The position numbers and the translations under genes are program-made. Below, in pieces: positions 23,701 to 58,088 of a stretch of DNA of 64,000 bases; position 1 is the stretch's first letter; each line of letters opens with the position of its first letter. Below the pieces are notes generated by a model that made no database searches, was not told where the DNA came from, and saw nothing but the letters and a program-made list of their open reading frames with translations. Source of the stretch: Fimbriosthenelais zetlandica (lineage: Eukaryota); the NCBI GenBank assembly GCA_977030845.1, contig OZ365111.1, positions 51,274,001 through 51,338,000 of the forward strand, given 5' to 3'.

Positions 23701-25791
23701 CACGTTCTAACGTGGCCAGAGATCGCACCACCATCCAAGATACCTTCTTTACGATGGCCAGGGCTACAAACAAGCAAACAGGGTTTATTATTAAAAGGAT
23801 TTAAACATTTACATCAAGACATTAGATCCATCATTAGGTCATATTTTTTACCTTCAACAGCATCTTCTGGAAGCAATTCTTCTTGCATCAAATCTTGGAA
23901 GATAATGGGTTCATCAAGCACGGATACGTCTACACCAGGGAGCGCCATTTTGATTGCCTTCATATGTACAATGGCGACAGTCTTCAGTAGGGCTAAAAAG
24001 ATAATTCAGTTTCAGAAACTGTCCAAGTTATAATGTTTTGTGCAATCAGGAATTTGCAGGCATTGTCAATCTTACCAGCATGATAGACGGCCTTCATCTG
24101 AGCCGAACACGCGTGGGTGGCATGCGGGAAGCTGAGGACTGAAGCTCCAAAGGCTGGTACATGCAATCCTGCGATTGCACCGGCAGAAAGTGGGGCGCCA
24201 AAACTAGCAGCATAACCAGGAGCAATACCAGCAAGACCAGCAGCAGAGACAAGGCCAGGAGCGATTCTTGCGATACCAGGGACGATACCAGCATCAACGG
24301 GGCCGACAAAGCTAGGAGCGATGCCAGCAATGGCTGGAGCAGCCATTCCTACTCCAAATACTGCAGCGGGATCAGCCCGGACAACGTGCACTGCAAGAAA
24401 GTTACATCTCACTCTAGAAACCGCTACACCCAAAACTAGTTGATAAAGCTTATGGCTTGCCTAGCGTCAATTAAGACTTACCGATATGATGGATGAAGGC
24501 AGCGATGGGCAGACCACGCGGCAGAGCGAGAGCGATATGATCAGCGTTGGCGACGATGGCATGAATGATGAAATGAATGGTCTTAACGATGTCCTGGGTT
24601 ACGACAGGGGCAAGGCTAGCGTCCGTTACGATTGTCTCTACAGCTGATGTGATTTTAGCGAAGGCTGGAGCTCCAACAATCATTCCATGTTCCCTGGAAC
24701 ATTTTCAGGTCAGGTCATTCTGACAATGTTGAAATTGCCTCAACAAAGAGCCTTAAAGTTGATTTCTCATTACAACATTTCAAGGCACGATCTAGGCATC
24801 AGGTTGTGCATCCATCGACAATTAAATTACTAATAGTTTTAAATTACTAATACTCACATGGCAACCAAAGCGTCCATTTTCTCCACGAAGGCCCACAGTT
24901 GTTTCTCAGAGATCATCTCGCTACAGGGAGCGGAAGCCAAGGCGGCCATGACAGTTTTGAAGTGGGTGATGACGTCATTTCCCATGACAAGTCCTGGTTT
25001 AGTTACAGCCATCTTCACAAAGTCATCAAGACCTGCACCAATACCGGAAATGCCTGGAAAAGATTGGAAAGATTGAATTGCAGCATTGTAAACCTTCGTG
25101 AAAGTTTTAAAAACGCATCTCAATATGATCAGATAAAAGACTTACCTTTGATGATAGCGGGGTACTCAGCCAGGGTACTGACGGGCGTGAAGTAACCACC
25201 CACAATGTCATTGATGACATCACCAACAATGGCTTCAGTTTCAGACGGTATGAAAGCCAGAGACCTGAGAGCCATACCACGGATCACAGCCGAGCTCACC
25301 ACCGTGTTAGGCTTCATTAATCCTGAAATAATTACAAACCGATGAGAACAATGCTAATACAAGCAAGTCTAGTTGTATGCTGTAAATATAAAGCAGTCAC
25401 ATCTGACAAACTTATCCAAGAATTAGTCAACAACAGACGCAAGCAGCAGAATGGAAGAGAAATTCTCACCAAAAGCAATAGTGAATTTGGCGCGTTGAGG
25501 GCAGGTCATTCGGGCGGCGGTCGTCTTCCATACATCCTGTAGAGTAGCGGCTATCTGGCCGACCTCAGCCTCGGTCATGTCCACTACAGCCTTAGTGGAC
25601 ATCTCCCGCACGCCAAACACGGCGCCACTTTCTGTAAGACAAGACGAAAGTCAGTTAAAGTGGACTATCAGTCAAGTTTCTGTGGAGAATTTGAACACAT
25701 TTAATGAAATTAAATTGGAAATAAAATATGAAAACTTACCGACGCCATAGGCGACGAGTAAGGCGAGGCAGAGAGGTAGACAGCGCCACAT
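20791..25791 (-). CDS. unassigned secreted modular helical/elastin-like-linker protein, copy 1 (17 exons, 1,109 aa; most divergent copy)
   Basis: Signal peptide MWRCLPLCLALLVAYGV. Exons 25740-25791, 25470-25631, 25146-25322, 24858-25053, 24482-24693, 24076-24390, 23852-23992, 23562-23763, 23361-23433, 23093-23255, 22843-23010, 22541-22729, 22045-22431, 21382-21958, 21172-21284, 21010-21088 and 20791-20914 all have GT-AG, matching phases and sum to 3,330 nt; introns 82-164 nt; AATAAA at 20574-20579 (minus). Confidence 0.85.
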
Positions 25792-25869
25792 GTTGAGATG
25801 TAGAAGTCGTGGATGTATGTAGAATGGTTGCTCTGAACGAGCAGTGACCAGAGCTGGTCATCTCACGCC

Positions 25870-25876
25870 TTTTATA
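25870..25876 (-). promoter_or_regulatory. TATA box of copy 1 (TATAAAA) with Inr-like TCACT 31 nt downstream
   Basis: Minus strand GGGAGTATAAAAGGCG; TCACT centred at 25845; ATG 79 nt from the box's gene-side end. Confidence 0.75.
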
Positions 25877-26287
25877 CTCCCACAGGTCCACACAGAATCC
25901 CAAACCACGGACCAGGATCAAAGGTCACATATAGGGGGGTAGGTAGGTGACAATTAGCTGGACAGTACACTGGACTGAAGCCCTCAACATGTGGGCCATC
26001 TCAACACATTTATTATCTTAAATTGATGAAAAGATTGGGGTGTTTATTGGTTTTAATTTGCAGGATTTTGTCATGAATGGAGAATTTAACAAAGGGCGGC
26101 CTCCCACTGAGTATGGAAGGGTCCATTGTCAAAAGGCTGGTCACTCTCGACACATTCTTGGAGTCAATCTCGACCTGCCAAGCTTGAAACCCGTTCTACA
26201 AGTTCCCGGCTATATTGCTAGATATATTGCTGGAATATTGTTAGATTGCCTGTTACTCGAGGGTTGCCTGTTGCTCATTGGCCAGCG

Positions 26288-26371
26288 GTCAGGATGGCCG
26301 AGCGGTCTAAGGCGCTGCGTTCAGGTCGCAGTCCACTTCTGTGGGCGTGGGTTCGAATCCCACTTCTGACA
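26288..26371 (+). tRNA. tRNA-Leu(CAG), array A no.1
   Basis: 84-nt GTCAGGATGGCCGAGCGGTCTAAGGCGCTGCGTTCAGGTCGCAGTCCACTTCTGTGGGCGTGGGTTCGAATCCCACTTCTGACA; class-II cloverleaf with variable arm; A and B boxes; followed by an oligo-dT terminator. Confidence 0.97.
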
Positions 26372-26456
26372 TTTTTTTTCACCCATGTGAGTGTATGACT
26401 TGTCTTGTTTTCAATTAGTTTGTACTCGAGGGTTGGCTATTGTTCATAGATCAGCG

Positions 26457-26540
26457 GTCAGGATGGCCGAGCGGTCTAAGGCGCTGCGTTCAGGTCGCAG
26501 TCCACTTCTGTGGGCGTGGGTTCGAATCCCACTTCTGACA
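26457..26540 (+). tRNA. tRNA-Leu(CAG), array A no.2
   Basis: Identical 84-mer; TTTTT downstream. Confidence 0.97.
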
Positions 26541-26627
26541 AGTCTTTTTCCACCCATTTGATGTTATGCATTGTCTTGATTTCAATTAGTTTGTACTAGA
26601 GGGTTGCCTGTTGCTCATTGGCCAGCG

Positions 26628-26711
26628 GTCAGGATGGCCGAGCGGTCTAAGGCGCTGCGTTCAGGTCGCAGTCCACTTCTGTGGGCGTGGGTTCGAATCC
26701 CACTTCTGACA
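26628..26711 (+). tRNA. tRNA-Leu(CAG), array A no.3
   Basis: Identical 84-mer. Confidence 0.97.
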
Positions 26712-26793
26712 GGTGTTTTTCCACCCATTTGAGAGTATGCCTTGTCTTGTTTTCAATTGTACTCGAGGGTTGGCTGTAGCTCTTTGTCTACCA

Positions 26794-26877
26794 GTCAGGA
26801 TGGCCGAGCGGTCTAAGGCGCTGCGTTCAGGTCGCAGTCCACTTCTGTGGGCGTGGGTTCGAATCCCACTTCTGACA
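26794..26877 (+). tRNA. tRNA-Leu(CAG), array A no.4
   Basis: Identical 84-mer. Confidence 0.97.
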
Positions 26878-27855: not shown

Positions 27856-30800
27856 TCAGCTGGTAAATGAAGGCATGTCAGTCAGGCCGACTGTATGGAG
27901 GGTCGCGATGTAAGCTTCAGCAATTCTCAGCTTCAGAATACCAACAGGTATGTTGGACACGGGTACAAAGTGTGCTCCAATACTGCAAGATGAACAATGA
28001 CAGTTTGAACAAAGTCAATGTAAAGCAAAACGCTAGCAAAAAATCAAATTCCTTTTCAAAAATGAATATTTTCGATGCTTACCCAGATTCCAGAGCCTCG
28101 ATGAAGGCAGGTGCTGCCAGGATAGATTCAACAGGGGTGGCGTCTAATCCAGAAGAAGGTACTAAAATATAAAATATTACATTATACCATAGTCCATCAT
28201 TCAGCCATTTAATTAAGTAAAAATAGCACAGATGGTTCTAGTTCAAGTATTTAATCTTACCGATTCCAACAGCTTTGCTGGTGATGATGGCTTTAACCAC
28301 ATGGTCAAACACTGGTAGGATGTCTGCAGCTGTCACCATCTTGGTCGTGCTACCCACCATTACATTAGCTAGTCTGAAAGGTAAAAATATTATCAAGCCA
28401 CGTCTTACATGCCATTCTACTAGGTTCCCCAGATACCTCCCAGATATATTTATAAGGTTCTTACACGTCTGCGTATTTACTGCGGATGCTTGTGTAGATT
28501 GAATTCTTCAAGAAGACTTCAGGTGCAATGGGTGCACCAAAGGCACCAATACCAGCAGCAATGTGGTTACTGATCAGTCCAAGGCCACCAATGGGAGAAC
28601 CAAAACCTCCAATACCAGCAAGTGGGCTAGCATATGCGCCGTAGGGCATGCCATAAGGTCCAGCAGCCATGGGAATGCCAGCAGTAATGGGACTACCATA
28701 AACTCCAACTCCAGCAGCAATTGGGTTACCATAAGCTCCAACTCCAGCAGCAATTGGGTTACCAAAAGCACCAACTCCAGCAGCAATGGGGTTACCAAAA
28801 GCGTCTATTCCCATACCAACAGTCAGGGGATTGACAGAAGCAGCCATGAGGGGGTTACCGACAGCAGCAATGGGGTTACTCATAGTACCAACTGCAGCAG
28901 CTAGGGGATTGCCAAATGCGTCAATTCCAGCAGCGTCAATTCCAGCAGCAGGAATGCCTGCAACGAGGGTCTTTCCAAAAGCAGCCGCGAGGGGGCTACC
29001 AAAAGCACCAAGACCAGCAGCGATGGGGTTACCAATAGCGTTCATTCCAATACCAGCAGCCAGGGGATGGCCAAGAGCAGCCGCAACGGGGAGGCCAAAG
29101 GCAGCACCAATTCCAGCAGCCAGGGGGTGAGCTAAGGCTCCAATTCCAGCAGCTATAGGGATTCCAGCAGCAATGGGACTGCCATAAGGTCCAATAGCTC
29201 CAATAGCTCCACAAGCTCCGGTGGCTACACAGGGCATTGTCATGTGCATAACTGAAAAGATTATCATATTTAAAATAGGTTTTTAAACATTTGGACATTC
29301 AGACTAAATTTTTTAGCTTTTAAATTCTCACCCAGTTGGCTGGCGAACCATGCTCGTACTGCGGCCATGTTTTCCATCTTGGCGATCGGTGAGAGGGCAA
29401 CACGAAGCTCATTAGCCAGCACTGCAAACGGTGTGGTCAGAAGTCCTTCAATGGGAGCAATGGCGGCCATGTTGGATGCACCAACGATCTTACCAAGCCA
29501 AGACTTTAGCACAGATGGTCCAAAGGCTGCCTCGATCCTTGCAGGTAATTCCACCAGTAGAGTCTTCACTGAAGCTTTGTAAGCCATTGGTTCAGCTCCA
29601 CAGATCGCTACTTCCTTCTTGATCACTGTCATGATCTTAGCTTTCATTACAGGCAAGATGGACGCCATTGTCGCCGTTCTCCAGTCAGCTGGGATGATCT
29701 CCTTGATGGCCTTCACTACAGTCACATCTGATAAATCAAGGTTCAGACATAACCAATTTATCATATTTTCACTTTACCATAGGAAACTTTGGGCTTTGGC
29801 CCAATTTGGCAACACTAAAGCCAAGCCATTTGTGTTGTATTGAAACACAAGCTACCAGCCTATGACAACTTACCAGCCACAGATGCTATGTGGGCCGCAA
29901 TGGCCGCCTGTTCACGTTCAAACAGTGAAGTAACTGCTGTCACAATCTCAGCCTCAGTGACAGTCTTAGTCTTGACAGCGCTGGTCATGGCGTAGTGAAG
30001 TACACTGGCGACAGAGGCCTTAGCCTTGATGAAGTGGGCATTGACGGCACCAGGCAGCAATGCTACAATTACAAAAATAACATTCCAAATGCATGTAGCA
30101 ATGCAATCATTACGCTTAAGCTACAGAATACGGACCATTCCATAGCAGGTGAAATCCATTGCCATACCTGCAGCGAATTTGGCGGCGACACCCTTGATGC
30201 AAACTGCTGGGACAGCTGCTTCTATTTCCTTAACCAGGGGCACGATCATTTGGGCGATTACTGCAGGGTGGATGCGAGCTAGTGGTTCAAATCCAGTCAA
30301 AGCATGGGCTGCCAGGATGGCTGCAACTGAGGGGTCTGCAATTGATATTAATACCAACAATATGTATTAGGTCCAACCATATATTAGGTCCATTTTATAG
30401 ACACTGAAGAGTCTTTAAGATAGCACCAATACAACTTACCATAGATTGGTGCTACACCTGCACCGGAAGCTCCCATCAGTCCCCACGCATGCGCCATAGC
30501 CATGATGGGTTTGATACTGACGATGTCCGCTGCAATGTCCATCTCCAAAGCCTCGATCACTCCACCACAAGCTCCAACAACAGGGGCGATCATAGCTACA
30601 ACCTGTAAGAAAAGTATTGCCTCAATTACTCTACAATTCAATAGCCACCATCCTTTTATCACTCCCTTATGTGTTAAGTTGAACAAGTTTAGTAAATTCA
30701 TTTCAGTTACCTTGGTCTTTTCAGCAACAGGCATTACAGATGCCAGGTCCCTTGCGATCATGTTTGGTATTCCAACAGCAAACCTTTTAAAGAAACAAGG

Positions 30801-33513
30801 CGAGTACAATTGAAGGTATATCAGGCTAATCAACTTAATAGATTCCGACTACCTAATGGCAAGTCCCCACTTTTGAATCTAAAATATTTTATACCAACCC
30901 GTTCTCAATCTTGACAATGGTAGCATGAACAGCCGACGTCAGTACTTTAGCATCCATGGCACAGATGCTGCCAGAATCCACCTTGGTGACGATATGGTTG
31001 AAGGCATCCACGATAGCGGGACCAGTCAGGGCTCCCTCACGTTCTAACGTGGCCAGAGATCGCACCACCATCCAAGACACCTTCTTTACGATGGCCAGGG
31101 CTGCAAATAAAACATGGTTTATTAATACAGCCACGTAGGTATATTATATCCTAGCTTGAAATATATTCAAGACAAGTCCACAACATTTGTTACCTTCGAC
31201 AGCGTCTTCTGCGACAAGTTCCTGTTTGATCAAATCTTGGAAGAAGGCAGGTTCAGCAAGCGCCGATAGGTCTACACTTGGGAGCGCCATTTTGATGGCC
31301 TTGGTATGAACAATGGTGATGGTCTTCAGTAGTGCTGAAAGATCGAACAACTCAGATAAGAAATCTACATACAAATGTCCGGAACTAACATTAAGTCAAA
31401 ATTGACATTCAATAATAATTTGCAGGCATTGTTAATCTTACCAGCATGATAGACAGCCTTCATCTGAGCCGAGCAGGCGTGGGTGGCAGGCGGGAAGCTG
31501 AGGACTGAAGCTCCAAAGCCAGGAACAGGGAATCCAGGGGCAATTCCAGCGATACCAGGGGCAATTCCAGCGATACCAGGGGCAATTCCAGCGATACCAG
31601 GGGCAATTCCAGCGATACCAGGGGCAATTCCAGCGATACCAGGGGCAATTCCACCGATACCAGGGGCAATTCCACCGATACCAGGGGCAATTCCACCGAT
31701 ACCAGGGGCAATTCCACCGATACCAGGGGCAATTCCACCGATACCAGGGGCAATTCCACCGATACCAGGGGCAATTCCACCGATACCAGGGGCAATTCCA
31801 GCAAGACCGGGGGCAGCGATACCACCAAGACCAGCAGCAAGTGGGGCAGCAATACCAGACGCAACACCAGGGGCAATTCCAGCTTCAGGCATAAAGGCTC
31901 CCATGCCAGCAATACCAGGAGCGATGCCAGCAATGGCCGGCGCAGCAATACCAGGGGCTATTCCAGGAAGACTAGCAGTAGCGGCAATTCCAGCTAGAGG
32001 GGCAGCAATACCAGGCGCAATTCCAGCTAGAGGGGCAGCTATACCAGGAGCGATGCCAGCAATGATTGGGGCAGCAATACCAGACATACCAGCTCCATAT
32101 ACTGCAGCAGTATCAGCCCGGACAACGTGCACTGCAAGAAAATTACCATCTCACTAGCAAATTAAAGCCAAAAATATTATCAAGTGCAACATTTTATTAA
32201 TCTTGTTCCGAGCTCAGCTTCTAACCAGGCAAAATGACTTACCGATATGATGGATGAAGGCAGCGATGGGCAGACCACGCGGCAGAGCGAGAGCGATATG
32301 ATCAGCGTTGGCGACGATGGCATGAATGATGAAATGAATGGTCTTAACGATGTCCTGGGTTACGACAGGGGCAAGGCTAGCGTCCGTTACGATGGTCTCT
32401 ACAGCGGATGTAATTTTAGCTACGGCTGGAGCGCCAACAATCATTCCAGGTCCCCTGAAACATTCATTACAGAACACTGAATTTTATGCTTTTATCTAAA
32501 GCCGACTGTTTAAATCTGATATAGCAGAATCCATCAAATTTTGAGCCAGATGAGCAATTCTAAGGCAATTAGAAATTAACCAAATTCATTAACTCACATG
32601 GCGACCACAGCGTCCATGTTCTCCACGAAGGCCCACAGTTGTTTCTCAGAGATCATCTCGCTACATGGAGCGGAAGCCAAGGCGGCCATGACAGTTTTGA
32701 AATGAGCGATGACGTCATTTCCCATGACGAGTCCTGGTTTACTTACAGCCATCTTCACAAAGTCATCAAGTCCTGCACCAATACCGGAAATGCCTGGAAA
32801 AGATCATCGAAATGCAGCATTGTAAACCTTGCTGGAAGTTTAAATATCAATTCAGTCACATCTCAATAAGATCAGATCCACAATTTACCTTTGATCATAG
32901 CGGGGTACTCAGCCAGGGTACTGACGGGCGTGAAGTAACCACCCACAATGTCATTGATCACATCACCAACAATGGCTTCAGTGTCAGACGGTATGAAAGC
33001 CAGAGACCTGAGAGCCATACCACGGATCACAGCCGAGCTCACCACCGTGTTAGGCTTCATTAATCCTGAAATAATTACAAACTGATTAGAACAAGTAAAC
33101 TAATCAAGATATAGGCCATTTACGTGTCAAAAACAGATCCAGTAGAAGAGGAATTTGGAAGGTTATGCGCTGTAGACGAATAGAGAAATTCTCACCAAAA
33201 GCAAGAGTGAATTTGGCGCGTTGAGGGCAGGTCATTCCGGCGGCGGTCGTCCTCCATACATCCTGTAGAGTAGCGGCTATCTGGCCGACCTCAGCCTCGG
33301 TCATGTCCACTACAGCCTTAGTGGACATCTCCCGCACGCCAAAGAAGGCGCGACTTTCTGTAAGACAAGACGACTCAGTTAAAAAGTAGACAATCGGTCA
33401 AGTTTGCGTGGAGAATTTCAAATTTAATGAAATTAAATCGAAATTAAATATGAAAACTTACCGACGCCATAGGCGACAAGTAAGGCGAGGCAGAGAGGTA
33501 GACAGCGCCACAT
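27856..33513 (-). CDS. same family, copy 2 (~1,310 aa)
   Basis: Same exon series and splice sites as copy 1; exon 6 = 690 nt with (IGGIAPG)7(IAGIAPG)5; exon 14 = 787 nt; ends ...TDMPSFTS*. Confidence 0.85.
31534..31806. repeat. 21-bp coding minisatellite (I[G/A]GIAPG x12 plus a flanking unit) in copy 2 exon 6
   Basis: CCAGGGGCAATTCCA(G/C)CGATA: 5 GCG-type then 7 CCG-type units on the + strand. Confidence 0.95.
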
Positions 33514-33591
33514 GTTGAGATGTAGAAGTCGTGGATGTATGTAGAATGGTTGCTCTGAACGAGCAGTGACCACAGCTGGTGATCTCACGCC

Positions 33592-33598
33592 TTTTATA
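33592..33598 (-). promoter_or_regulatory. TATA box of copy 2
   Basis: Identical motif and identical 79-nt offset from the ATG. Confidence 0.75.
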
Positions 33599-34010
33599 CT
33601 CCCACAGGTCCCCACAGAATCCCAAACCACGGACCAGGATCAAAGGTCACATATAGGGGGGGTAGGTAGGTGACAATTAGGTGGACAATACACTGGATTG
33701 AAGCCCTCAACGTGTGGGCCATCTCAACACATTTATTATCTTAAAATGATGAAAAGATTTGTGTGTTTATTGGTTTTAATTTGTGAGATTTTGTCGGAAA
33801 TCTAAAATTTAACACAGGGCGGCCTCCCACTGAGTATGGAAGGGTCCATTGTCAAAAGGCTGGTCACTCTCGACATATTCTTGGAGTCAATCTCGACCTG
33901 CTAAGCTTGAAACCCGTTCTACAAGTTCCGGGCTATATTGCTAGATACATTGCTGGAATATTGTTAGATTGCCTGTTAACCGAGGCTTGGCTGTTGCTCA
34001 TAGGTCAGCA

Positions 34011-34094
34011 GTCAGGATGGCCGAGCGGTCTAAGGCGCTGCGTTCAGGTCGCAGTCCACTTCTGTGGGCGTGGGTTCGAATCCCACTTCTGACA
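34011..34094 (+). tRNA. tRNA-Leu(CAG), array B no.1
   Basis: Identical 84-mer. Confidence 0.97.
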
Positions 34095-34180
34095 TATTTT
34101 TTTCACCCATGTGAGGGTATGCCTTGTCTTGATTTCAATTAGTTTGTACTCGAGGGTTGGCTGTTGCTCCTAGACCAGCA

Positions 34181-34264
34181 GTCAGGATGGCCGAGCGGTC
34201 TAAGGCGCTGCGTTCAGGTCGCAGTCCACTTCTGTGGGCGTGGGTTCGAATCCCACTTCTGACA
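34181..34264 (+). tRNA. tRNA-Leu(CAG), array B no.2
   Basis: Identical 84-mer. Confidence 0.97.
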
Positions 34265-34350
34265 TATTTTTTTCACCCATGTGAGGGTATGCCTTGTCTT
34301 GTTTTCAATTAGTTTGTACTCGAGGGTTGGCTGTTGCTCCTAGACCACCA

Positions 34351-34434
34351 GTCAGGATGGCCGAGTGGTCTAAGGCGCTGCGTTCAGGTCGCAGTCCACT
34401 TATGTGGGCGTGGGTTCGAATCCCACTTCTGACA
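34351..34434 (+). tRNA. tRNA-Leu(CAG), array B no.3 (loop variants)
   Basis: D-loop C>T and variable-loop C>A; stems intact. Confidence 0.92.
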
Positions 34435-47400: not shown

Positions 47401-50352
47401 AAGTTGAACAAGTTCATTAAATTCCTTTCAGTTACCTTGGCCTTTTCAGCAACAGGCATTACAGATGCCAGGTCCCGTGCGATCATGTTTGGTATTCCAA
47501 CAGCAAACCTATTAAAGAAACAAGGCGAGTACAACTGAAGGGATATCAGGCTAATCAACTTAATAGATTCCGACTATCTATAATCAAACTCTGGCAAGTC
47601 CCCACTTTTGAATCTAAACTAAATATTTTTATACCAACCCGTTCTCAATCTTGACAATGGTAGCATGAACAGCAGACGTCAGTGCTTTAGCATCCATGGC
47701 ACAGATGCTGCCAGAATCCACCTTGGTGACGATATGGTTGAAGGCATCCACGATAGCGGGACCAGTCAGGGCACCTTCACGTTCTAACGTGGCCAGAGAT
47801 CGCACCACCATCCAAGACACCTTCTTTACGATGGCCAGGGCTGCACACAAAACAAATTAAAACGGATTTCAACACAAGGTATAATAAAATCTAGCTCTTC
47901 ATATTCAAGACAAGCCCACGACATTTGTTACCTTCGACAGCGTTTTCTGCAACAAGTTCCTGTTGGATCAAATCTTGGAAGAAGGCAGGTTCAGCAAGCG
48001 CTGCTAGGTCTACACTTGGGAGCGCCATTTTGATGGCCTTCGTATGAACAATGGTGATAGTCTTCAGTAGGGCTGAAAGATCAAACAACTCTGAAAATAA
48101 ATCTACATACAAATGTGCCTAACTAACATTAAGTTAGATTGAACATTGGTGCCATCAAAATTGATTTGCAGGCATTGTTAATCTTACCAGCATTGTAAAC
48201 AGCCTTCATCTGAGCCGAGCAGGCGTGGGTGGCAGGCGGGAAGCTGACGACTGAAGCACCAAAGCCAGGTACAGGCAATCCAGGGGCAATACCAGCCAAA
48301 CCAGCAGCAGAGATACCAGGGGCAATACCAGCCAAACCAGCAGCAGAGATACCAGGGGCAATACCAGCCAGACCAGGGGCAATACCAGCCAGACCAGGGG
48401 CAGCGATACCAGGGGCAATACCAGCCATACCACCAAGACCAGGGGCAATTCCAGGAGTAGCGATACCAGCAAGACCAGCAGCAGAGATACCAGGGGCTAT
48501 TCCAGCCAGACCAGGGGCAGCGATACCAGGGACAATTCCAGCAAGACCAGGGGCAGCGATACCAGGGACAATTCCACCAAGACCAGCAGCAAGTGGGGCA
48601 GCAATACCAGATGCAACACCAGGGGCGATTCCAGCAATTCCAGCTTCAGGCATAGAGGCTCCCATGCCAGCAAAACCGGGGGCAATTCCAGCTAGAGGGG
48701 TAGCAATACCAGGAGCGATGCCAGCAATGGCCGGGGCAGCAATACCAGCGGCAATTCCAGCAAGACCAGCAGTAGCGGCAATTCCAGCTTCAGGCATAGA
48801 GGCTGCCATACCAGCAATACCGGGTGCAATTCCAGCTAGTGGAGAAGCAATACCAGGAGCGATGCCAGCAGCAATACCAGGAGCGATACCAGCAATCGCC
48901 GGGGCAGCAATACCAGACATACCAGCTCCATATACTGCAGCAGTATCAGCCCGGACAACATGCACTGCAAGAAAATTACCATCTCACTTGTAAAGTAAAG
49001 ACAAAACTATAAAGTCCAACCATTTGATTAATCTCGTTCCGAGCTCATCTTCTATCCAGGCAACTAAGACTTACCGATATGATGGATGAAGGCAGCGATG
49101 GGCAGACCACGCGGCAGAGCGAGAGCGATATGATCAGCGTTGGCGACGATGGCATGAATGATGAAATGAATTGTCTTAACGATGTCTTGGGTTACGACAG
49201 GGGCAAGGCTAGCGTCCGTTACGATGGTCTCTACAGCTGATGTGATTTTAGCGACGGCTGGAGCTCCAACAATCATTCCATGTTCCCTGTAACATTCATT
49301 AAAAAATACTCTGGATTTTTTTGCTTTTATCTCAAGCTAACCGTATGAGCTAGGCACAGAAAGACTCGACCAGAATTTGATGGCCGTAGGCTTTTGTATC
49401 CGACATAAGCCATTAGAGATTTACCAAATTCAGCTACTTACATGGCTACAACAGCGTCCATTTTCTCCACGAAGGCCCACAGTTCTTCCTCAGAGATCAT
49501 CTCGCTACAGGGAGCGGACGCCACGGCGGCCATGACAGTTTTGAAGTGGGCGATGACGTCATTTCCCATGACGAGTCCTGGTTTAGTTACAGCCATCTTC
49601 ACAAAGTCATCAAGTCCTGCGCCAATACCGGAAATGCCTGGAAAAGATCATTGAATTGCAGCATAGTAAACCTCCGTGAAAGTTTTAATAACGCGTCTCA
49701 ATATGATCAGATAAAAGACTTACCTTTGATGATAGCGGGGTACTCAGCCAGGGTACTGACGGGCGTGAAGTAACCACCCACAATGTCATTGATGACATCA
49801 CCAACAATGGCTTCAGTTTCAGACGGTATGAAAGCCAGAGACCTGAGAGCCATACCACGGATCACAGCCGAGCTCACCACCGTGTTAGGCTTCATTAATC
49901 CTGAAATAATTACAAACTGATTAGTACAAGTAAAATAAGCAAAATATAGGCCATTTACGGGTCCAAAATAGACCCAGTAGCACCGACATTTAGAGGTAAA
50001 GTCTTTTGTACCCAGCCATTTACGAATAGAAGAATTCTCACCAAAAGCAATAGTGAATTTGGCGCGTTGAGGGCAGGTCATTCCGGCGGCGGTCGTCCTC
50101 CATACATCCTGTAGAGTAGCGGCTATCTGGCCGACCTCAGCCTCGGTCATGTCCACTATAGCCTTAGTGGACATCTCCCGCACGCCAAACACGGCACGAC
50201 TTTCTGTAAGTCAACACAAAAGTCAGTTAAAGTGGAATTTCTGTGGAGAATTTGAACAACTTTAATGAAATTAAGTTGGAAATAAACTATAAAAACTTAC
50301 CGACGCCATAGGCGACGAGTAAGGCGAGGCAGAGAGGTAGACAGCGCCACAT
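44474..50352 (-). CDS. same family, copy 4 (~1,370 aa)
   Basis: Same exon series; exon 6 = 777 nt, exon 14 = 895 nt with (GNPIAAGVGAF)11. Confidence 0.85.
45328..45690. repeat. 33-bp coding minisatellite x11 (GNPIAAGVGAF) in copy 4 exon 14
   Basis: 11 perfect AAAAGCACCCACTCCAGCAGCAATGGGGTTACC units. Confidence 0.95.
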
Positions 50353-50430
50353 GTTGAGATGTAGAAGTCGTGGATGTATGTAGAATGGTTGCTCTGAACG
50401 AGCAGTGACCAGAGCTGGTCATCTCACGCC

Positions 50431-50437
50431 TTTTATA
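50431..50437 (-). promoter_or_regulatory. TATA box of copy 4
   Basis: Identical motif and offset. Confidence 0.75.
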
Positions 50438-50848
50438 CTCCCACAGGTCCACACAGAATCCCAAACCACGGACCAGGATCAAAGGTCACATACAGGGGGG
50501 TAGGTAGGTGACGATTAGCTGGACAATACACTGGACTGAAGCCCTCAACATGTGGGCCATCTCAACACATTTATTATCTTAAATTGATGAAAAGATTTGG
50601 GTGTGTATTGGTTTTAATTTGTGAGATTTTGACGGAAATTTGGAATTTAACAAAGGGCGGCCTCACACTGAGTATGGAAGGGTCCATTGTCAAAAGGCTG
50701 GTCACTCTCGACACATTCTTGGAGTCAATCTCGACCTGCCAAGCTTGAAACCCGTTCTACAAGTTCCCGGCTATATTGCTAGATATATTGCTGTAATATT
50801 GTTAGATTGCCTGTTACTCGAGGGTTGGCTGTAGCTCATAGACCAGCG

Positions 50849-50932
50849 GTCAGGATGGTCGAGCGGTCTAAAGCGCTGCGTTCAGGTCGCAGTCCACTTC
50901 TGTGGGCGTGGGTTCGAATCCCACTTCTGACA
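50849..50932 (+). tRNA. tRNA-Leu(CAG), array D no.1 (D-stem disrupted, possible pseudogene)
   Basis: GGCCG>GGTCG and TAAGG>TAAAG give U.G and C.A in the D stem; the changes are not compensatory. Confidence 0.7.
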
Positions 50933-51018
50933 TAATTTTTTCACCCATGTGAGTTCATGACTTGTCTTGTTTTCAATTAGTTTGTACTCGAGGGTTGGCT
51001 GTTATTCATATGCCAGCA

Positions 51019-51102
51019 GTCAGGATGGCCGAGCGGTCTAAGGCGCTGCGTTCAGGTCGCAGTCCACTTCTGTGGGCGTGGGTTCGAATCCCACTTCTGA
51101 CA
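51019..51102 (+). tRNA. tRNA-Leu(CAG), array D no.2
   Basis: Identical 84-mer. Confidence 0.97.
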
Positions 51103-52280: not shown

Positions 52281-55200
52281 TCAGCTGGTGAATGAAGGCA
52301 TGTCAGTCAGGCCGACTGTATGGAGGGTCGCGATGTAAGCTTCAGCAATTCTCAGCTTCAGAATACCAACAGGTATGTTGGTCACGGGTACAAAGTGTGC
52401 GCCAATACTGCAAGAGAAAGAAGACAGTCGCTATACCAGAAAAGAGATCGTCATGCAACTTTTAGACCATGGGATGCAAGCCAAGAAACCCTCATGGTTA
52501 ATTTCAAATACATCATTTCGATCCTTACCCAGATTCCAGAGCCTCGATGAAGGCAGGTGCTGACAGGATAGATTCAACAGGGGTGGCTTCCAATCCAGCG
52601 ACAGGTACTAAGAACGATACATTTCATTACATACAGTACAATATACCATAGTCCATCATTCAGCTGTTTCAGTACATTAAAAATAGTAACCAGAGATGGT
52701 TCTAGTTCAAGTATTCAGTCTCTTACCGATTCCAACGGCTTTGCTGGTGATGATGGCTTTAACCACGTGGTCAAACACTGGTAGGATGTCTGAGGCTGTC
52801 ACCATCTTGGTCGTACTACCCACCATTACATTAGCCAGTCTGAAAAAGGACAAAATCATCAAGCCACGTCTTACATGCCATAATACTAAGTTCCCCAGAT
52901 ACCTCCCAGATATATTTATAAGGTTCTTACACGTCTGCGTATTTACTGCGGATGCTTGTGTAGATTGAATTCTTCAAGAAGACTTCAGGTGCAATAGGTG
53001 CACCAAAGGCGCCAATACCAGCAGCAGCAACGGGGTTACTGATCAGTCCGAGGCCACCAATGGGAGAACCAAAACCTCCAATACCAGCCATTCGGTTAGC
53101 ATATGCACCGTAGGCCATGCCATAATGTCCAGCGGTAATGGGACTACCAAAAGCACCCACTCCAGCAGCAATGGGGTTACCAAAAGCACCCACTCCAGCA
53201 GCAATGGGGTTACCAAAAGCACCCACTCCAGCAGCAATGGGGTTACCAAAAGCACCAAGTCCAGCAGCAATGGGGTTACCAAAAGCACCAAGTCCAGCAG
53301 CAATGGGGTTACCAAAAGCACCCACTCCAGCAGCAATGGGGTTACCAAAAGCACCCACTCCAGCAGCAATGGGGTTACCAAAAGCACCCACTCCAGCAGC
53401 AATGGGGTTACCAAAAGCACCCACTCCAGCAGCAATGGGGTTACCAAAAGCACCAAGTCCAGCAGCAATGGGGTTACCAATAGTACCAATTGCAGCAGGT
53501 AGGGGATTGCCAAATGCGTCAATTCCAGCAGCAGGAATGCCAGCAACGAGGGGCGTTCCAAAAGCACCAAAACCAGCAGCGATGGGGTTACCAATAGCGT
53601 TCATTCCAATACCAGCAGCCAGGGGATTGCCAAGAGCAGCCGCAATGGGGAGGCCAAAGGCAGCACCAATTCCAGAAGCAATAGGGATTGCAGCAGCAAT
53701 GGGATTGCCATAAGGTCCCATTGCTCCAATAGCTCCACAAGCACCGGTGGCTACACAGGGCATCGTCATGTGCATTACTGAAAAGATTATCATCTTTATC
53801 ATCATCATCATAAAGTTTAACAGTTAATAACATTTAGTCTGAATTTCCTAATGTTTAAATTCTCACCCAGTTGGTTGGCGAACCATGCTCGTACTGCGGC
53901 CATGTTTTCCATCTTGGCGATCGGTGAGAGGGCAACACGAAGCTCATTAGCCAGCACTGCAAACGGTGTGGTCAGTAGTCCTTCAATGGGAGCAATGGCG
54001 GCCATGTTGGATGCACCAACGATCTTTCCAAGCCAAGACTTTAGCACAGATGGTCTAAAGGCTGTCTCGATCCTTGCAGGTAGCTCAACTAGTATAGCTT
54101 TCTCCCACGCTTTGTCAGCCATTGGTTCAGCTCCACAGATCGCTACTTCCTTCTTGATCACCGTCATGATCTTAGCTTTCATTACAGGCAAGATGGACGC
54201 CATTGTCGCCGTTCTCCAGTCTGCTGGGATAATCTCCTTGATGGCCTTCACTACAGTCACATCTATAATAAGTCACATCTGTAAAGTTTCAGACCCGACT
54301 AATATATTTTCAGCTTACCATATAAATATGTGCTTAGGCCCAATTTGACAAAACTAAAGCCAAGCCATTTGTGTTGTATGGAAACACAAGCTACCAGCCT
54401 ATGACAACTTACCAGTCACAGATGCTATATGGGCAGCAATGGTCGCCTGTTCACCTTCAAACAGTGAAGTAACTGCTGTCACAATCTCAGCCTCAGTGAC
54501 AGTCTTGGTCTTGACAGCGCTGGTCATGGCATAGTGAAGTACACTGGTGACAGAGGCCTTAGCCTTGATGAAGTGAACATTGACGGCACCAGGCAGCAAT
54601 GCTACAAGAACAAAAATAACATACCAAATGCATGTTGCAATGCAGGATTACCTTTCTAGCCACAGCTATGCTCCATTTCATAAACTAATAGGAAAACTCT
54701 TGTCATACCTGCAGCGAATTTGGCGGCGACGCCCTTGATGCAAACTGCTGGGACAGCCGCTTCTATTTCCTTAACCAGGGGCACGATCATTTGGGCGATT
54801 ACTGCAGGGTGGATGCGAGCTAGTGGTTCAAATCCAGTCAAAGCATGGCCTGCCAGGATAGCTGCAACTGCTGGGTCTGCAATTGACATCAGTACCAACA
54901 ATTATGCCATATATTTGGCCATTTCATAGACTCTAAAGCTTCTTTAAGAAAAATCGAACTAGTCTTACCATAGATTGGTGCTACACCTGCACCGGAAGCT
55001 CCCATCAGTCCCCACGCATGCGCCATAGCCATGATGGGTTTGATACTGACGATGTCCGCTGCAATGTCCATCTTTAAAGCCTCGACCACTCCACCACAAG
55101 CTCCAACCACAGGGGCGATCATAGCTACAACCTGTAAGATAGGGCACCTCAATTACTCTACCATTCAATAACGACCAGCATATTGTGAGCCCCATATGTG

Positions 55201-58088
55201 TTAAGTTTAACAAGTTCATTAAATTTATTTCAGTTACCTTGGCCTTTTCAGCAACAGGAATTACAGATGCCAGGTCGCTTGCGATCATGTTTGGTATTCC
55301 AACAGCAAACCTATTAAAAGAAACAACGTTACAATTTATCAGGCCAATTAAGTCAATAGAATCCGACTATTGAGACCAACTCAGTCCCCAATCAAACCTA
55401 AAATTAGTTATACGGACCAGTTCTCAATCTTGACAATGGTAGCATGAACAGCAGACGTCAGTGCTTTAGCATCCATGGCACAGATGCTGCCAGAGTCCAC
55501 CTTGGCGACGATATGGTTGAAGGCATCCACGATAGCGGGACCAGTCAGGGCTCCCTCACGTTCTAACGTGGCCAGAGATCGCACCACCATCCAAGACACC
55601 TTCTTTACGATGGCCAGGGCTGCAAATAAACATGGTTAATTAAAAAAGGTACAACACTCTCGCTTTAAATATTAAAAACAAGTCCATGACATTTGTTACC
55701 TTCGAAAGCGTCTTCTGCAACAAGTTCCTGTTGCATTAAATCTTGGAAGAAGGCAGGTTCAGCAAGCGCTGCTAGCTCTACACTTGGGAGCGCCATTTTG
55801 ATGGCCTTCGTATGAACAATGGTGATAGTCTTCAGTAGGGCTGAAAGATCGAACAACTCAGATAAGAAATCGACCTACAAATGTTTCGAACTAAACATTA
55901 AGTCAAAATGGACATTCAATAATTATTCGCAGGCATTGTTAATCTTACCAGCATGATAGACAGCCTTCATCTGAGCCGAGCAGGCGTGGGTGGCAGGCGG
56001 GAAGCTGAGGACTGAAGCTCCAAATCCAGGGGCAATTCCAGCGATACCAGGGGCAATTCCAGCGATACCAGGGGCAATTCCAGCGATACCAGGGGCAATT
56101 CCAGCGATACCAGGGGCAATTCCAGCGATACCAGGGGCAATTCCAGCGATACCAGGGGCAATTCCAGCGATACCAGGGGCAATTCCAGCGATACCAGGGG
56201 CAATTCCAGCGATACCAGGGGCAATTCCAGCGATACCAGGGGCAATTCCAGCGATACCAGGGGCAATTCCAGCGATACCAGGGGCAATTCCAGCGATACC
56301 AGGGGCAATTCCAGCGATACCAGGGGCAATTCCAGCGATACCAGGGGCAATTCCAGCGATACCAGGGGCAATTCCAGCGATACCAGGGGCAATTCCAGCA
56401 AGACCGGGGGCAGCGATACCAGGGGCAATACCAGCAAGACCAGCAGCAAGTGGGCCAGCAATACCAGACGCAACACCAGGGGCGATTGCAGCAATTCCAG
56501 CTTCAGGCATAGAGGCTCCCATGCCAGCAATACCGGGAGCGATGCCAGCAATGGCTGGGGCAGCAATACCCGGGGCAATTCCAGCTAGAGGGGCAGCAAT
56601 ACCAGGCGCAATTCCAGCTAGAGGGGCAGCAATACCAGCAGCGATGCCAGCAATTGCTGGGGCAGCAATACCAGACATACCAGCTCCATATACTGCAGCA
56701 GTATCAGCCCGGACAACGTGTACTGCAAGAAAATTACCATCTCTCTAGCAAAAGACAAAACTATAAAGTCCAACCATTTGATTAATCTTGTTCTGAGCTC
56801 AGCTTCTATCCAGGCAACCAAGACTTACCGATGTGATGGATGAAGGCAGCGATGGGCAGACCACGCGGCAGAGCGAGAGCGATATGATCAGCGTTGGCGA
56901 CGATGGCATGAATGATGAAATTAATGGTCTTAACGATGTCCTGGGTTACCACTGGTGCAAGGCTAGCGTCCGTTACGATGGTCTCTACAGCTGATGTGAT
57001 TTTAGCTACGGCTGGAGCTCCAACAATCATTCCATGTTCCCTGAAACATTCATAGAGTATTCCTGCGTTTACGCTTTTATCTAAAGCTAACCGTATGAGC
57101 TAGGCACAGAAAGACTGGACCAGAATTTGATGGCCGTAGATTGCCTTTTGTATCCGACATAAGCCATTAGAGATTTACCAAATTCAGCTACTTACATGGC
57201 GACCACAGCGTCCATTTTCTCCACGAAGGCCCACAGTTCTTCCTCAGAGATCATCTCGCTACAGGGAGCAGACGCCAAGGCGGCCATGACAGTTTTGAAG
57301 TGCGTGATGACGTCATTTCCCATGACGAGTCCTGGTTTAGTTACAGCCATCTTCACAAAGTCATCAAATCCTGCACCAATAGAGGAAATGCCTGGAAAAG
57401 ATCATCGAATTGTGAGGTTCCACGATGTTTTAAAAAATCTACATCTCCAAAAGATCAGAGCCACAATTTACCTTTGATCATGGCGGGGTACTCAGCCAGG
57501 GTACTGACGGGCGTGAAGTAACCACCCACAATGTCATTGATGACATCACCAACAATGGCTTCAGTTTGAGACGGTATGAAAGCCAGAGACCTGAGAGCCA
57601 TACCACGGATTACAGCCGAGCTCACCACCGTGTTAGGCTTCATTAATCCTGAAATAATTACAAACTGATTAGTACAAGTAAAATCATCAAGATATAGGCC
57701 ATTTACAGTTTCAAAACAGCTTTTAAATTCCTCTTCTACTGGATCTATGCACTGTAGAGGAATACAGAAATTCTCACCAAAAGCAATAGTGAATTTGGCG
57801 CGTTGAGGGCAGGTCATTCCGGCGGCGGTCGTCCTCCATACATCCTGTAGAGTAGCGGCTATCTGGCCGACCTCAGCCTCGGTCATGTCCAATACAGCCT
57901 TAGTGGACATCTCCCGCACGCCAAACAAGGCACGACTTTCTTTAAGTCGACACAAAAGTCAGTTAAAGTGGAATTTCTGTGGAGAATTTGAACAACTTTA
58001 ATGAAATTAAGTTGGAAATAAACTATAAAAACTTACCGACGCCATAGGCGACGAGTAAGGCGAGGCAGAGAGGTAGACAGCGCCACAT
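52281..58088 (-). CDS. same family, copy 5 (~1,355 aa)
   Basis: Same exon series; exon 6 = 774 nt with (IAGIAPG)17; exon 14 = 847 nt with 10 GNPIAAG(V/L)GAF units; the exon-8 donor is weaker (GTCCGT). Confidence 0.82.
53149..53478. repeat. 33-bp coding minisatellite x10 (GNPIAAG[V/L]GAF) in copy 5 exon 14
   Basis: 10 units in protein order L,V,V,V,V,L,L,V,V,V. Confidence 0.95.
56026..56403. repeat. 21-bp coding minisatellite x17 (IAGIAPG) plus a flanking unit in copy 5 exon 6
   Basis: 17 perfect CCAGGGGCAATTCCAGCGATA units. Confidence 0.95.

What the first reader, a model, noticed from the sequence alone, without database searches (positions are those of the whole stretch)
24076..56722. Two hypervariable linker exons expand independently in each paralogue while staying in frame
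Seen in sequence: exon 6 is 315, 690, 771, 777 and 774 nt, and exon 14 is 577, 787, 718, 895 and 847 nt in copies 1-5; every difference is a multiple of 3. Different repeat types were amplified: (IGGIAPG)7(IAGIAPG)5 in copy 2, mixed GIAAPGLAG blocks in copies 3-4, (IAGIAPG)17 in copy 5; the 11-mer occurs ~3, ~3, 11 and 10 times in copies 2-5. Perfect DNA-level units point to very recent slippage. The flanking modules keep near-constant length. Inference: a combinatorial way to tune linker length and hydrophobicity (extensibility, phase-separation temperature) among co-secreted isoforms, analogous to spidroin or byssal collagen variation.
Basis: partly seen in the sequence, partly recalled or inferred. 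Interest (0 to 1): 0.75.

Follow-up and report, generated by a model that had tools for sequence, protein, structure and literature searches.

The report
Orphan hydrophobic protein genes, variable repeats
A marine invertebrate carries five side-by-side intact genes for a very greasy secreted protein with no known relatives, and two of its 17 exons hold repeat runs that grow, shrink and are swapped between the copies without breaking the reading frame, as in silk and other material-protein genes.

Summary
On the minus strand lie five tandem 17-exon genes, each with its own TATA box, signal peptide, GT-AG introns and AATAAA, and an intact ORF of 1109-1373 aa. Exon 6 is 315/690/771/777/774 nt and exon 14 is 577/787/718/895/847 nt. 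The other 15 exons have the same length in all copies, except a 9-nt deletion in exon 13 of copy 1.

The named repeat types and perfect DNA units are present. All 42 alignment gaps in the two exons are multiples of 3, against 20 of 98 in introns.

"Independent" expansion is only partly right. The copies are mosaics made by gene conversion or unequal exchange. Exon-6 arrays pair as 3=4 and 2~5; exon-14 arrays pair as 4~5 and 2~3.

The proteins are orphans: no hit among 1.84 billion proteins for exon 13, and no Pfam family. They are extremely hydrophobic (GRAVY about +0.8). Both linkers are uncharged; exon 14 is predicted disordered.

Adaptive "tuning" is unsupported: linker hydropathy is nearly constant, and exon-6 cores are 214-216 aa in three copies.

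The gene family is new; the evolutionary behaviour is a known kind.

The parts
20791..25879 (-). Copy 1 gene, the divergent copy with short linkers. TATA at 25879, ATG at 25791, 17 exons, stop TAG ending at 20791, AATAAA at about 20578. Product 1109 aa.
27856..33601 (-). Copy 2 gene. TATA at 33601, ATG at 33513, stop at 27856. Product 1308 aa.
36636..42438 (-). Copy 3 gene. TATA at 42438, ATG at 42350, stop at 36636. Product 1312 aa.
44474..50440 (-). Copy 4 gene, used as the reference model. TATA at 50440, ATG at 50352, stop at 44474, AATAAA at about 44356. Product 1373 aa.
52281..58176 (-). Copy 5 gene. TATA at 58176, ATG at 58088, stop at 52281. Product 1356 aa.
24076..24390 (-). Exon 6 of copy 1, 315 nt. 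No tandem array; degenerate G/A/P/I/V linker with a 62-aa core.
31442..32131 (-). Exon 6 of copy 2, 690 nt. (IGGIAPG)7(IAGIAPG)5; the 21-nt array lies at 31534-31815.
40195..40965 (-). Exon 6 of copy 3, 771 nt. 36-nt units encoding GIVPGIAAPGLA (3 copies) and GIAPGISAAGLA.
48188..48964 (-). Exon 6 of copy 4, 777 nt. Same array as copy 3, with 2-3 unit gains or losses.
55949..56722 (-). Exon 6 of copy 5, 774 nt. (IAGIAPG)17, with 16 identical 21-nt units at 56026-56412.
21382..21958 (-). Exon 14 of copy 1, 577 nt. Degenerate FG.P/GNPIAAG motifs with no clean array.
28465..29251 (-). Exon 14 of copy 2, 787 nt. Three 33-nt units.
37289..38006 (-). Exon 14 of copy 3, 718 nt. Three 33-nt units.
45104..45998 (-). 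Exon 14 of copy 4, 895 nt. Ten identical 33-nt units encoding GAFGNPIAAGV, plus one variant unit; array at 45308-45726.
52931..53777 (-). Exon 14 of copy 5, 847 nt. Seven units identical to the copy 4 unit, plus two GGACTT variants and the terminal unit; array at 53128-53533.
46089..49079 (-). Tract, in copy 4 coordinates, where copies 3 and 4 are about 99-100% identical including introns. The flanks are 80-92% identical. This marks a recent conversion or exchange.
26288..26877 (+). Array of 4 tRNA-Leu(CAG) genes upstream of the copy 1 promoter, 171-bp period. It belongs to the duplicated unit.
34011..35462 (+). Array of 9 tRNA-Leu(CAG) genes upstream of the copy 2 promoter.
42846..43271 (+). 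Array of 3 tRNA-Leu(CAG) genes upstream of the copy 3 promoter.
50849..51102 (+). Array of 2 tRNA-Leu(CAG) genes upstream of the copy 4 promoter. Copy 5 has none.

Best explanation
The region holds a lineage-restricted cluster of five functional tandem genes. Each encodes a secreted, very hydrophobic 111-133 kDa block protein with this layout: signal peptide; helical module (exons 2-5); uncharged G/A/I/P linker 1 (exon 6); helical modules (exons 7-13); uncharged FG/NP-containing linker 2 (exon 14); short helical C-terminal module (exons 15-17).

Each linker sits inside one large exon and is a coding minisatellite with 21-, 33- or 36-nt units. Its length changes by replication slippage or unequal exchange of whole units. 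Whole arrays or parts of them are moved between paralogues by gene conversion or unequal crossover, so the copies are mosaics. Selection removes frame-breaking and composition-breaking variants.

The length differences themselves are most simply a by-product tolerated within bounds, not a designed combinatorial code.

Shown here: the gene models, the array anatomy, the mosaicism, the purifying selection and the lack of relatives.

Inferred: the product is an extracellular self-assembling material (matrix, fibre, coating or rubber-like network) in which the disordered hydrophobic linkers supply cohesion or extensibility, and the helical modules with their conserved Cys, His and Tyr supply assembly and cross-links.
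For: Gene reality:
- All five copies have a TATA box, an ATG, a hydrophobic signal peptide (MWRCLPLCLALLVAYG), 16 GT-AG introns at the same places, intact ORFs and an AATAAA about 118 nt after the stop.
- Non-repeat codons give dN/dS 0.22-0.39.
- Exons are 93-98% identical, introns 73-93%.

Frame and selection in the linkers:
- 42 of 42 gaps are multiples of 3, against 20 of 98 in introns.
- Differences concentrate at third codon positions, and dN/dS is about 0.3-0.45.

Recent unit turnover:
- 10 and 16 perfectly identical units in c4 exon 14 and c5 exon 6.
- c3 and c4 exon 6 show 1 substitution in 244 aligned codons but 2-3 unit indels.

Exchange between copies:
- Sliding-window identities switch partners along the gene.
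- Quartet informative sites give 89:7:5 for 34|25 in exons 4-13, but 1:11:3 in the promoter to exon 2 and 2:2:10 in exon 3.
- Chi-square p is 1.6e-20 on post-hoc segments. 0 of 10,000 order shuffles give as few pattern switches.
- Identical array units are shared by c2/c5 (exon 6) and by c4/c5 (exon 14).

Material-like properties:
- Mature GRAVY is +0.72 to +0.83. Linker cores carry 0-4 charged residues and are 22-28% G (18% in copy 1 exon 6), 20-32% A, 10-14% P and 11-24% I.
- AlphaFold gives no structure for exon 14 (pLDDT 28) and helices for exon 13 (pLDDT 51).
- Conserved Cys flank both linkers, and an HHIVH cluster precedes linker 1.

Orphan status:
- 0 hits among 1.84 billion representatives for exon 13.
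- No Pfam family for any exon tested and no PDB relative.
Against: - No RNA, protein or tissue evidence.
- The function rests on composition and architecture alone.
- 2P+G of the linker cores (0.40-0.57) is below that of classic elastin repeats (0.80 for GVPGV). As I recall the Rauscher et al. 2006 rule (not re-read here), it is also below the roughly 0.6 boundary for elastomers, so amyloid- or silk-like packing is equally possible.
- The helical modules are themselves unusually hydrophobic (GRAVY 0.6-0.9), which could point to lipid or membrane association instead.
- Exon-6 cores of 214, 216 and 216 aa in c3, c4 and c5 hint at selection on length, which pure drift does not predict.
- Array lengths come from a single assembly.
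Confidence: 0.6

Rival explanations
1. The five copies are co-secreted isoforms, and the differences in linker length and repeat type are adaptive. They would form a combinatorial set that tunes extensibility or phase-separation temperature of one material, like graded byssal preCols or spidroin paralogues.
For: - All five copies are intact and under purifying selection.
- The roughly 250-bp promoter regions are highly conserved, for example 246 of 250 between c1 and c4, which is compatible with shared regulation.
- Repeat types differ in G/P content: IGGIAPG has 2P+G of 0.71 against 0.42 for GIAPGISAAGLA.
- Exon-6 core GRAVY ranges from 1.27 to 1.43.
- The analogy to preCols and to clustered MaSp genes is real (PMC9999432; PMC9779670).
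Against: - There is no expression or co-localisation evidence.
- Exon-14 hydropathy is flat in c2-c5 (0.92-0.96).
- Exon-6 cores are nearly equal in length in three copies.
- Arrays are shared and exchanged between copies, which erodes stable isoform identities.
- Slippage alone explains length change in frame.
Confidence: 0.2
2. The protein is not a load-bearing material. It is a secreted lipid- or membrane-associated protein, such as a lipid carrier, surface film or hydrophobic coat, and the linkers are merely tolerant spacers.
For: - The whole mature protein is hydrophobic (GRAVY about +0.8).
- The helical modules score 0.6-0.9 with only about 17% charged residues.
- One segment, VVAMIAPVVGACGGVVEAL, reaches transmembrane-like hydropathy of 2.04.
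Against: - Only one transmembrane-like peak occurs in about 1370 aa.
- No Pfam lipid-binding family was hit.
- Long uncharged PG-containing disordered blocks are typical of self-assembling extracellular proteins (PMC5703643).
Confidence: 0.12
3. An artefact or dead locus. Either the array lengths are assembly errors, or the copies are unexpressed relics.
For: No read or RNA evidence could be obtained. The representative-protein library holds no relative of the exon-13 domain.
Against: - There are five intact ORFs of more than 1100 codons with 80 conserved splice sites.
- dN/dS is well below 1.
- Third-position bias occurs inside the arrays.
- Copies differ by 7-27% in introns, so they are not assembly duplicates.
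- Every array is in frame.
Confidence: 0.05

Closest known systems
Clustered major ampullate spidroin genes (MaSp cluster of Argiope; PMC9779670)
   Same: - Tandem cluster of paralogous secreted material-protein genes.
- Repeats are highly homogenised within a gene but differ between genes.
- There is evidence of intergenic gene conversion.
- Non-repetitive helical end modules.
   Different: - Repeats make up only about 35-40% of this protein, in two separate single exons, not more than 90%.
- There are 17 exons.
- No spidroin N- or C-terminal domain was hit in Pfam, which was tested by exon only.
- There is no poly-Ala or GPGXX.
- There is no sequence homology.
Mussel byssal preCols (PreCol-D, -P, -NG; review PMC9999432)
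   Same: A set of paralogues built as block copolymers that share a core and differ in low-complexity flanking blocks, including an elastin-like GXGPG type.
   Different: - There is no collagen Gly-X-Y core; the longest run is 6 triplets.
- There are no His-rich termini, only one HHIVH cluster.
- The linkers here are internal and flanked by helical modules.
- There is no homology.
Tropoelastin hydrophobic domains and elastin-like polypeptides (PMC5703643; PMC9999432)
   Same: Uncharged, hydrophobic, G/A/P-rich low-complexity blocks with recurrent PG. One block (exon 14) is predicted disordered; exon 6 was not modelled. Each block is encoded by its own exon.
   Different: - There are no alternating Lys-Ala cross-linking domains (no KAAK).
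- Ile replaces Val.
- P+G content is lower: 2P+G is 0.40-0.57 against 0.80 for GVPGV.
- There are only two blocks, and large folded modules lie between them.
Abductin (scallop hinge rubber; PMC9999432)
   Same: A short FG-containing Gly-rich repeat unit of about 10-11 residues (GGFGGMGGGX against GAFGNPIAAGV), a signal peptide, and an Ala-rich N-terminal part with Cys.
   Different: - Abductin is about 58% Gly and about 1% Pro, and is only 116 aa long.
- Linker 2 here is 22-27% Gly and 10-11% Pro, and is embedded in a protein of about 1300 aa.

Membership tests
Coding minisatellite (VNTR) exons in a tandem gene family evolving by slippage and gene conversion | Head-to-tail units whose length is a multiple of 3, with high identity within an array | tested here: met
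   TRF finds periods of 21, 33 and 36 nt at 88-100% matches. There are 10 and 16 identical units in two arrays.
Coding minisatellite (VNTR) exons in a tandem gene family evolving by slippage and gene conversion | Unit-number differences between otherwise near-identical copies | tested here: met
   c3 and c4 exon 6 show 1 substitution in 244 aligned codons but 2-3 unit indels.
Coding minisatellite (VNTR) exons in a tandem gene family evolving by slippage and gene conversion | Mosaic relationships along the gene (phylogenetic incongruence) | tested here: met
   0 of 10,000 shuffles give as few pattern switches.
Coding minisatellite (VNTR) exons in a tandem gene family evolving by slippage and gene conversion | Length polymorphism between individuals | not testable with these tools
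Elastin / tropoelastin | Alternating hydrophobic and Lys-rich (KAAK / KP) cross-linking domains | tested here: not met
   No KA(2-3)K motif in any copy. Linker cores hold 0-4 charged residues.
Elastin / tropoelastin | High combined Pro+Gly content of the hydrophobic domains | tested here: inconclusive
   2P+G is 0.40-0.57, against 0.80 for GVPGV. The principle is in PMC5703643; the numeric boundary is from memory.
Spidroins | Conserved spidroin N-terminal and C-terminal domains | tested here: inconclusive
   Pfam scans of exons 2-5, 7-8 and 10-14 found no family above cut-off. Exons 9 and 15-17 were too short to scan usefully, and the spliced protein could not be submitted.
Spidroins | Poly-Ala, GGX or GPGXX repeat motifs dominating the protein | tested here: not met
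   No A(5+) run and 0-1 GPG per copy. Repeats make up about 35-40% of the length.
Byssal preCols | Central collagen Gly-X-Y triple-helix domain | tested here: not met
   The longest G-X-Y run is 6 triplets.
Any described protein family (by homology) | Significant sequence match to a known family or solved structure | tested here: not met
   phmmer of exon 13 gave 0 hits among 1.84 billion representatives. Pfam gave nothing, PDB nothing and the Atlas nothing. An exon-14 search returned only two low-complexity look-alikes.

The most novel reading that the evidence does not exclude
These five genes may encode a previously undescribed, lineage-specific class of animal biomaterial protein. It would be an extremely hydrophobic secreted block copolymer in which two chemically different disordered linkers (a GIAPG type and an FGNP type) are held between helical, Cys/His-bearing modules. 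Linker length would be under stabilising selection (about 216 aa for linker 1) while the repeat type turns over, making it a natural experiment in sequence-independent length control of an elastomer or fibre.
Probability: 0.3. Interest if true: 0.65.

Novelty: new variant of a known kind. Interest (0 to 1): 0.42.

Why it matters
If the product is a real extracellular material, this is a new sequence family for biomaterials work. It would offer Ile-based, elastin-like 7-mers and an FG/NP 11-mer, both charge-free, in a 110-130 kDa helical scaffold.

The locus is also a compact, fully resolved example of how coding minisatellites and gene conversion between paralogues jointly shape a structural gene family. 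Three copies reach the same linker length with different repeats, which makes selection on length, rather than on sequence, directly testable.

As an evolutionary phenomenon it is not surprising. Silk, mucin and byssal genes behave the same way.

Tried and rejected
1. RNA or read evidence. The RNA-run search listed none.

2. Homology.
- phmmer of exon 13 against 1.84 billion representatives gave 0 hits.
- Pfam by exon returned only sub-threshold noise.
- PDB returned noise.
- ESM Atlas on exon 13 and exon 6 scored 0.74 or less.
- The search for homologous proteins on exon 14 returned two unrelated proteins that merely share AFGNP[ILM] repeats.
Full-length relatives were therefore searched only through exon 13.

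3. Structure. The exon-13 model is helical but has pLDDT 51, so no fold search was run. Exon 14 has pLDDT 28.

4. Literature. The motif strings GIAPG, IAGIAPG, GIAPGIA, GAFGNPI and AFGNP gave no relevant paper. A keyword search for hydrophobic worm structural proteins found none.

5. First gene model. Acceptors copied from copy 4 for exons 7 and 16 gave TG in other copies. I replaced them with the acceptors conserved in all five copies, TTTCAG|CCCTACTG and TTTTAG|TACCTG.

6. tRNA link. I considered that the tRNA-Leu(CAG) arrays supply the genes' codon demand and rejected it. Leu is only 6-7% of the protein, and the linkers are G/A/I/P.

7. Internal module homology, from another note on this window. 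hhalign gave probability below 3% and Smith-Waterman z scores were only 0.7-2.6, so it is not established.

Full report
WHAT IS THERE

The window holds five tandem repeats of a unit about 8 kb long. Tandem Repeats Finder shows arrays of period 21, 33 and 36 nt recurring once per unit, and 171-bp arrays between units. Read on the minus strand, the short-period arrays encode G/A/I/P-rich peptides.

I built a gene model for copy 4 directly from the sequence. It has a TATA box (GAGTATAAAAGG) at 50440 and an ATG at 50352, followed by a hydrophobic signal peptide (MWRCLPLCLALLVAYG). There are 17 exons, all with GT-AG introns of 80-165 nt. The stop is at 44474 and an AATAAA lies about 118 nt downstream.

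Transferring the boundaries to the other copies gave intact ORFs in all five: 1109, 1308, 1312, 1373 and 1356 aa for copies 1-5 (copy 1 lies at the lowest coordinates). Two acceptors had to be corrected to the ones conserved in all copies. Exon 7 starts at TTTCAG|CCCTACTG and is 141 nt. Exon 16 starts at TTTTAG|TACCTG and is 79 nt.

CHECK OF THE OBSERVATION

Exon 6 is 315, 690, 771, 777 and 774 nt in copies 1-5. Exon 14 is 577, 787, 718, 895 and 847 nt.

The other 15 exons have identical lengths in every copy. The only exceptions are a 9-nt deletion in exon 13 of copy 1 and a stop codon that lies 3 codons (9 nt) earlier in copy 1.

The repeat inventory is as described.
- Copy 2 has (IGGIAPG)7(IAGIAPG)5 and copy 5 has (IAGIAPG)17.
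- Copies 3 and 4 have 12-mer blocks GIVPGIAAPGLA and GIAPGISAAGLA.
- The 11-mer GAFGNPIAAGV occurs about 3, 3, 11 and 10 times in copies 2-5.
- DNA-level perfection is real. There are ten identical 33-nt units in copy 4 exon 14, and sixteen identical 21-nt units in copy 5 exon 6.

IS THE FRAME PRESERVATION MORE THAN CHANCE?

Partly it is automatic, because all unit lengths are multiples of 3. But in a plain nucleotide alignment of the whole units, all 42 gap events inside exons 6 and 14 are multiples of 3, and many are not whole units (3, 6, 9, 12, 15 nt). Only 20 of 98 gap events in the introns of the same genes are multiples of 3. The 2.45 kb of non-repeat exon columns carry a single 9-nt indel.

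Within the two repeat exons, substitutions between copies fall mostly on third codon positions, and dN/dS is about 0.3-0.45. Non-repeat codons give dN/dS of 0.22-0.39 with dS of 0.05-0.14.

So the modelled frame is the translated one, and all five copies are kept by selection.

NOT INDEPENDENT: THE COPIES ARE MOSAICS

Exons are 93-98% identical between copies and introns 73-93%, so the duplications are not very recent. Yet the closest relative of each copy changes along the gene.
- Copies 3 and 4 are 99-100% identical, introns included, from about 49079 to 46089 in copy 4 coordinates. They are only 80-92% identical on either side.
- In the exon-14 array, copy 4 is 97-98% identical to copy 5.
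- In the exon-6 array, copy 2 is 96% identical to copy 5.
- In exons 2-3 and the promoter, copy 1 is closest to copy 4 (246 of 250 promoter positions).

For the quartet of copies 2-5, parsimony-informative sites support different groupings in different regions. The counts below are for the patterns 34|25 : 45|23 : 35|24.

| Region | 34|25 | 45|23 | 35|24 |
|---|---|---|---|
| Promoter to exon 2 | 1 | 11 | 3 |
| Exon 3 | 2 | 2 | 10 |
| Exons 4-13 | 89 | 7 | 5 |
| Exons 14-17 | 9 | 13 | 3 |

None of 10,000 shuffles of site order gave as few pattern switches as observed: 43, against a shuffled mean of 79.

At the array level:
- Copies 2 and 5 share the identical 21-nt unit (4 versus 16 copies) and the same terminal variant. 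The IGGIAPG block of copy 2 is a one-nucleotide variant of that unit, amplified seven times.
- Copies 4 and 5 share the identical 33-nt unit with a GTG codon, where copies 2 and 3 have GTT. They also both lack a segment (…SLNPLTVGMGID…) present in copies 2 and 3.
- Copies 3 and 4 share one exon-6 array, with 1 substitution in 244 aligned codons, that already differs by two or three unit gains or losses.

The picture is unit slippage or unequal exchange within arrays, plus conversion or crossover between paralogues. This is what has been described for clustered spidroin genes (PMC9779670). Copy 1 has short, degenerate linkers without clean arrays. It may show the unexpanded state.

WHAT THE PROTEIN IS

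No relative was found.
- phmmer of the largest non-repeat exon (exon 13, 131 aa) against 1.84 billion representative proteins returned nothing at E of 0.001 or better.
- Exon-wise Pfam scans returned nothing above cut-off. PDB sequences and the ESM Atlas also returned nothing.
- A word-based search with exon 14 returned only two unrelated proteins that happen to carry AFGNP[ILM] repeats.
- The motif strings are absent from the searchable literature.

Earlier notes of this scan describe the genome as that of a marine invertebrate, probably a worm. I did not test that.

The mature proteins are 111-133 kDa with pI about 6.1-6.4 and GRAVY +0.72 to +0.83.
- The linker cores hold 0-4 charged residues. 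They are 22-28% Gly (18% in the exon-6 core of copy 1), 20-32% Ala, 10-14% Pro and 11-24% Ile.
- AlphaFold gives no secondary structure for exon 14 (pLDDT 28). It gives helices, at low confidence, for exon 13 (pLDDT 51).
- Conserved Cys lie right after linker 1 (…THAC…) and right before linker 2 (…MPCVATGAC…). An HHIVH cluster precedes linker 1.
- There is no collagen core, no KAAK cross-link motif, no poly-Ala and no GPGXX.

So this is not elastin, a spidroin or a preCol by any defining feature I could test.

HOW IT PROBABLY WORKS

Hydrophobic, uncharged, Pro/Gly-containing disordered blocks are the hallmark of self-assembling extracellular proteins such as elastin. Their disorder and hydration are maintained by combined Pro+Gly content (PMC5703643; review PMC9999432).

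Here 2P+G is 0.40-0.57 for the cores. Single units score 0.57 (IAGIAPG), 0.71 (IGGIAPG) and 0.45 (the 11-mer), against 0.80 for GVPGV. From my memory of Rauscher et al. 2006 (not re-read), this lies at or below the elastomer boundary. Cohesive, beta-prone or silk-like behaviour is therefore as plausible as rubber elasticity.

My best reading, by inference, is a secreted block copolymer for an extracellular material. The helical Cys/His/Tyr-bearing modules would act as assembly and cross-link nodes, and the two linkers as cohesive or extensible segments. A lipid- or surface-associated role is the main functional rival, because the helical modules are themselves very hydrophobic.

Combinatorial tuning among co-secreted isoforms is not excluded, but nothing supports it.
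- Expression is unknown.
- Exon-14 hydropathy is flat across copies 2-5 (0.92-0.96).
- Exon-6 cores are 214, 216 and 216 aa in copies 3, 4 and 5, although copy 5 uses a pure 7-mer array and copies 3 and 4 use mixed 12-mers. That coincidence points to a constraint on length rather than diversification. It is a single post-hoc observation.

LIMITS

- No read-level or RNA evidence was available.
- Splicing, expression and array lengths therefore rest on one assembly and on conservation among the five copies.
- The spliced full-length protein could not be submitted to the search or folding tools, so homology was tested exon by exon.

VERDICT

The VNTR exons, their recent turnover and the frame constraint hold. 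Independent expansion does not hold, and adaptive tuning is unsupported.
- The gene family is new and orphan. Its evolutionary behaviour is a known kind.

Noticed in passing
window 26288-26877, 34011-35462, 42846-43271, 50849-51102 (+ strand): Arrays of 4, 9, 3 and 2 tRNA-Leu(CAG) genes, with a 171-bp period and a T-run after each gene. They sit head-to-head about 400 bp upstream of the promoters of copies 1-4; copy 5 has none. 12 of the 18 genes are identical. The tRNA array is part of the duplicated unit and is itself copy-number variable. Leu is only 6-7% of the proteins, so codon supply does not explain the link.
   Followed up: partly
exon 6 cores of copies 3, 4 and 5 (40195-40965, 48188-48964, 55949-56722): Linker 1 cores are 214, 216 and 216 aa, although copy 5 uses a pure (IAGIAPG)17 array and copies 3 and 4 use mixed 12-mers. 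This may indicate stabilising selection on length, or it may be coincidence.
   Followed up: partly
exon 6 versus exon 14, all copies: Exon 6 is a symmetric phase 1-1 exon whose length is always a multiple of 3, so skipping it would keep the frame and give a product without linker 1. Exon 14 is always 1 mod 3, so skipping it alone would shift the frame.
   Followed up: no
48073-48090 and 40080-40097 (exon 7 acceptor); 44787-44799 (exon 16 acceptor of copy 4): Copies 3 and 4 have a second AG acceptor 18 nt upstream of the conserved exon-7 acceptor, and it is in frame (it would add ELFDLS). Copy 4 has a second AG 12 nt downstream of the conserved exon-16 acceptor. These are candidate alternative 3' splice sites.
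   Followed up: no
P0001 and P0002: The motif AFGNP[ILM] recurs as a tandem repeat in two unrelated proteins. One is a membrane-anchored protein with TDAFGNPIVQPQ repeats; the other is a JGI hypothetical protein with NGAFGNPI 8-mers. This may be a convergent short structural motif.
   Followed up: no
all five genes, non-repeat exons versus introns: Synonymous divergence (dS 0.05-0.14) is clearly lower than intron divergence (7-27% mismatches). This suggests conversion tracts centred on exons, or constraint on synonymous sites.
   Followed up: no
window 22045-25631 (note s1-181654 on this window): Another note claims three to four homologous modules of about 230 aa inside the protein. hhalign between modules gave probability below 3%, and Smith-Waterman scores were only z 0.7-2.6 above shuffles. 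Internal homology is not established.
   Followed up: partly
window 59331-60494 and 61745-62992 (+ strand): Two intronless ORFs of 387 and 415 aa have the look of rhodopsin-type GPCRs (seven hydrophobic segments, DRC / DRF after TM3). They lie just upstream of copy 5 and mark the end of the cluster.
   Followed up: no
window 11240-12304, 16221-17369, 18017-19921 (+ strand): An LRR membrane-protein ORF and two C2H2 zinc-finger ORFs flank the cluster on the other side. The second zinc-finger ORF has a 27-nt PVGETVIG repeat at 19529-19676.
   Followed up: no
exons 6 and 14, both strands: All other frames of the arrays, on both strands, are also open (for example PGAIPAI… on the + strand). Mechanical ORF lists therefore show many overlapping spurious ORFs here.
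   Followed up: yes
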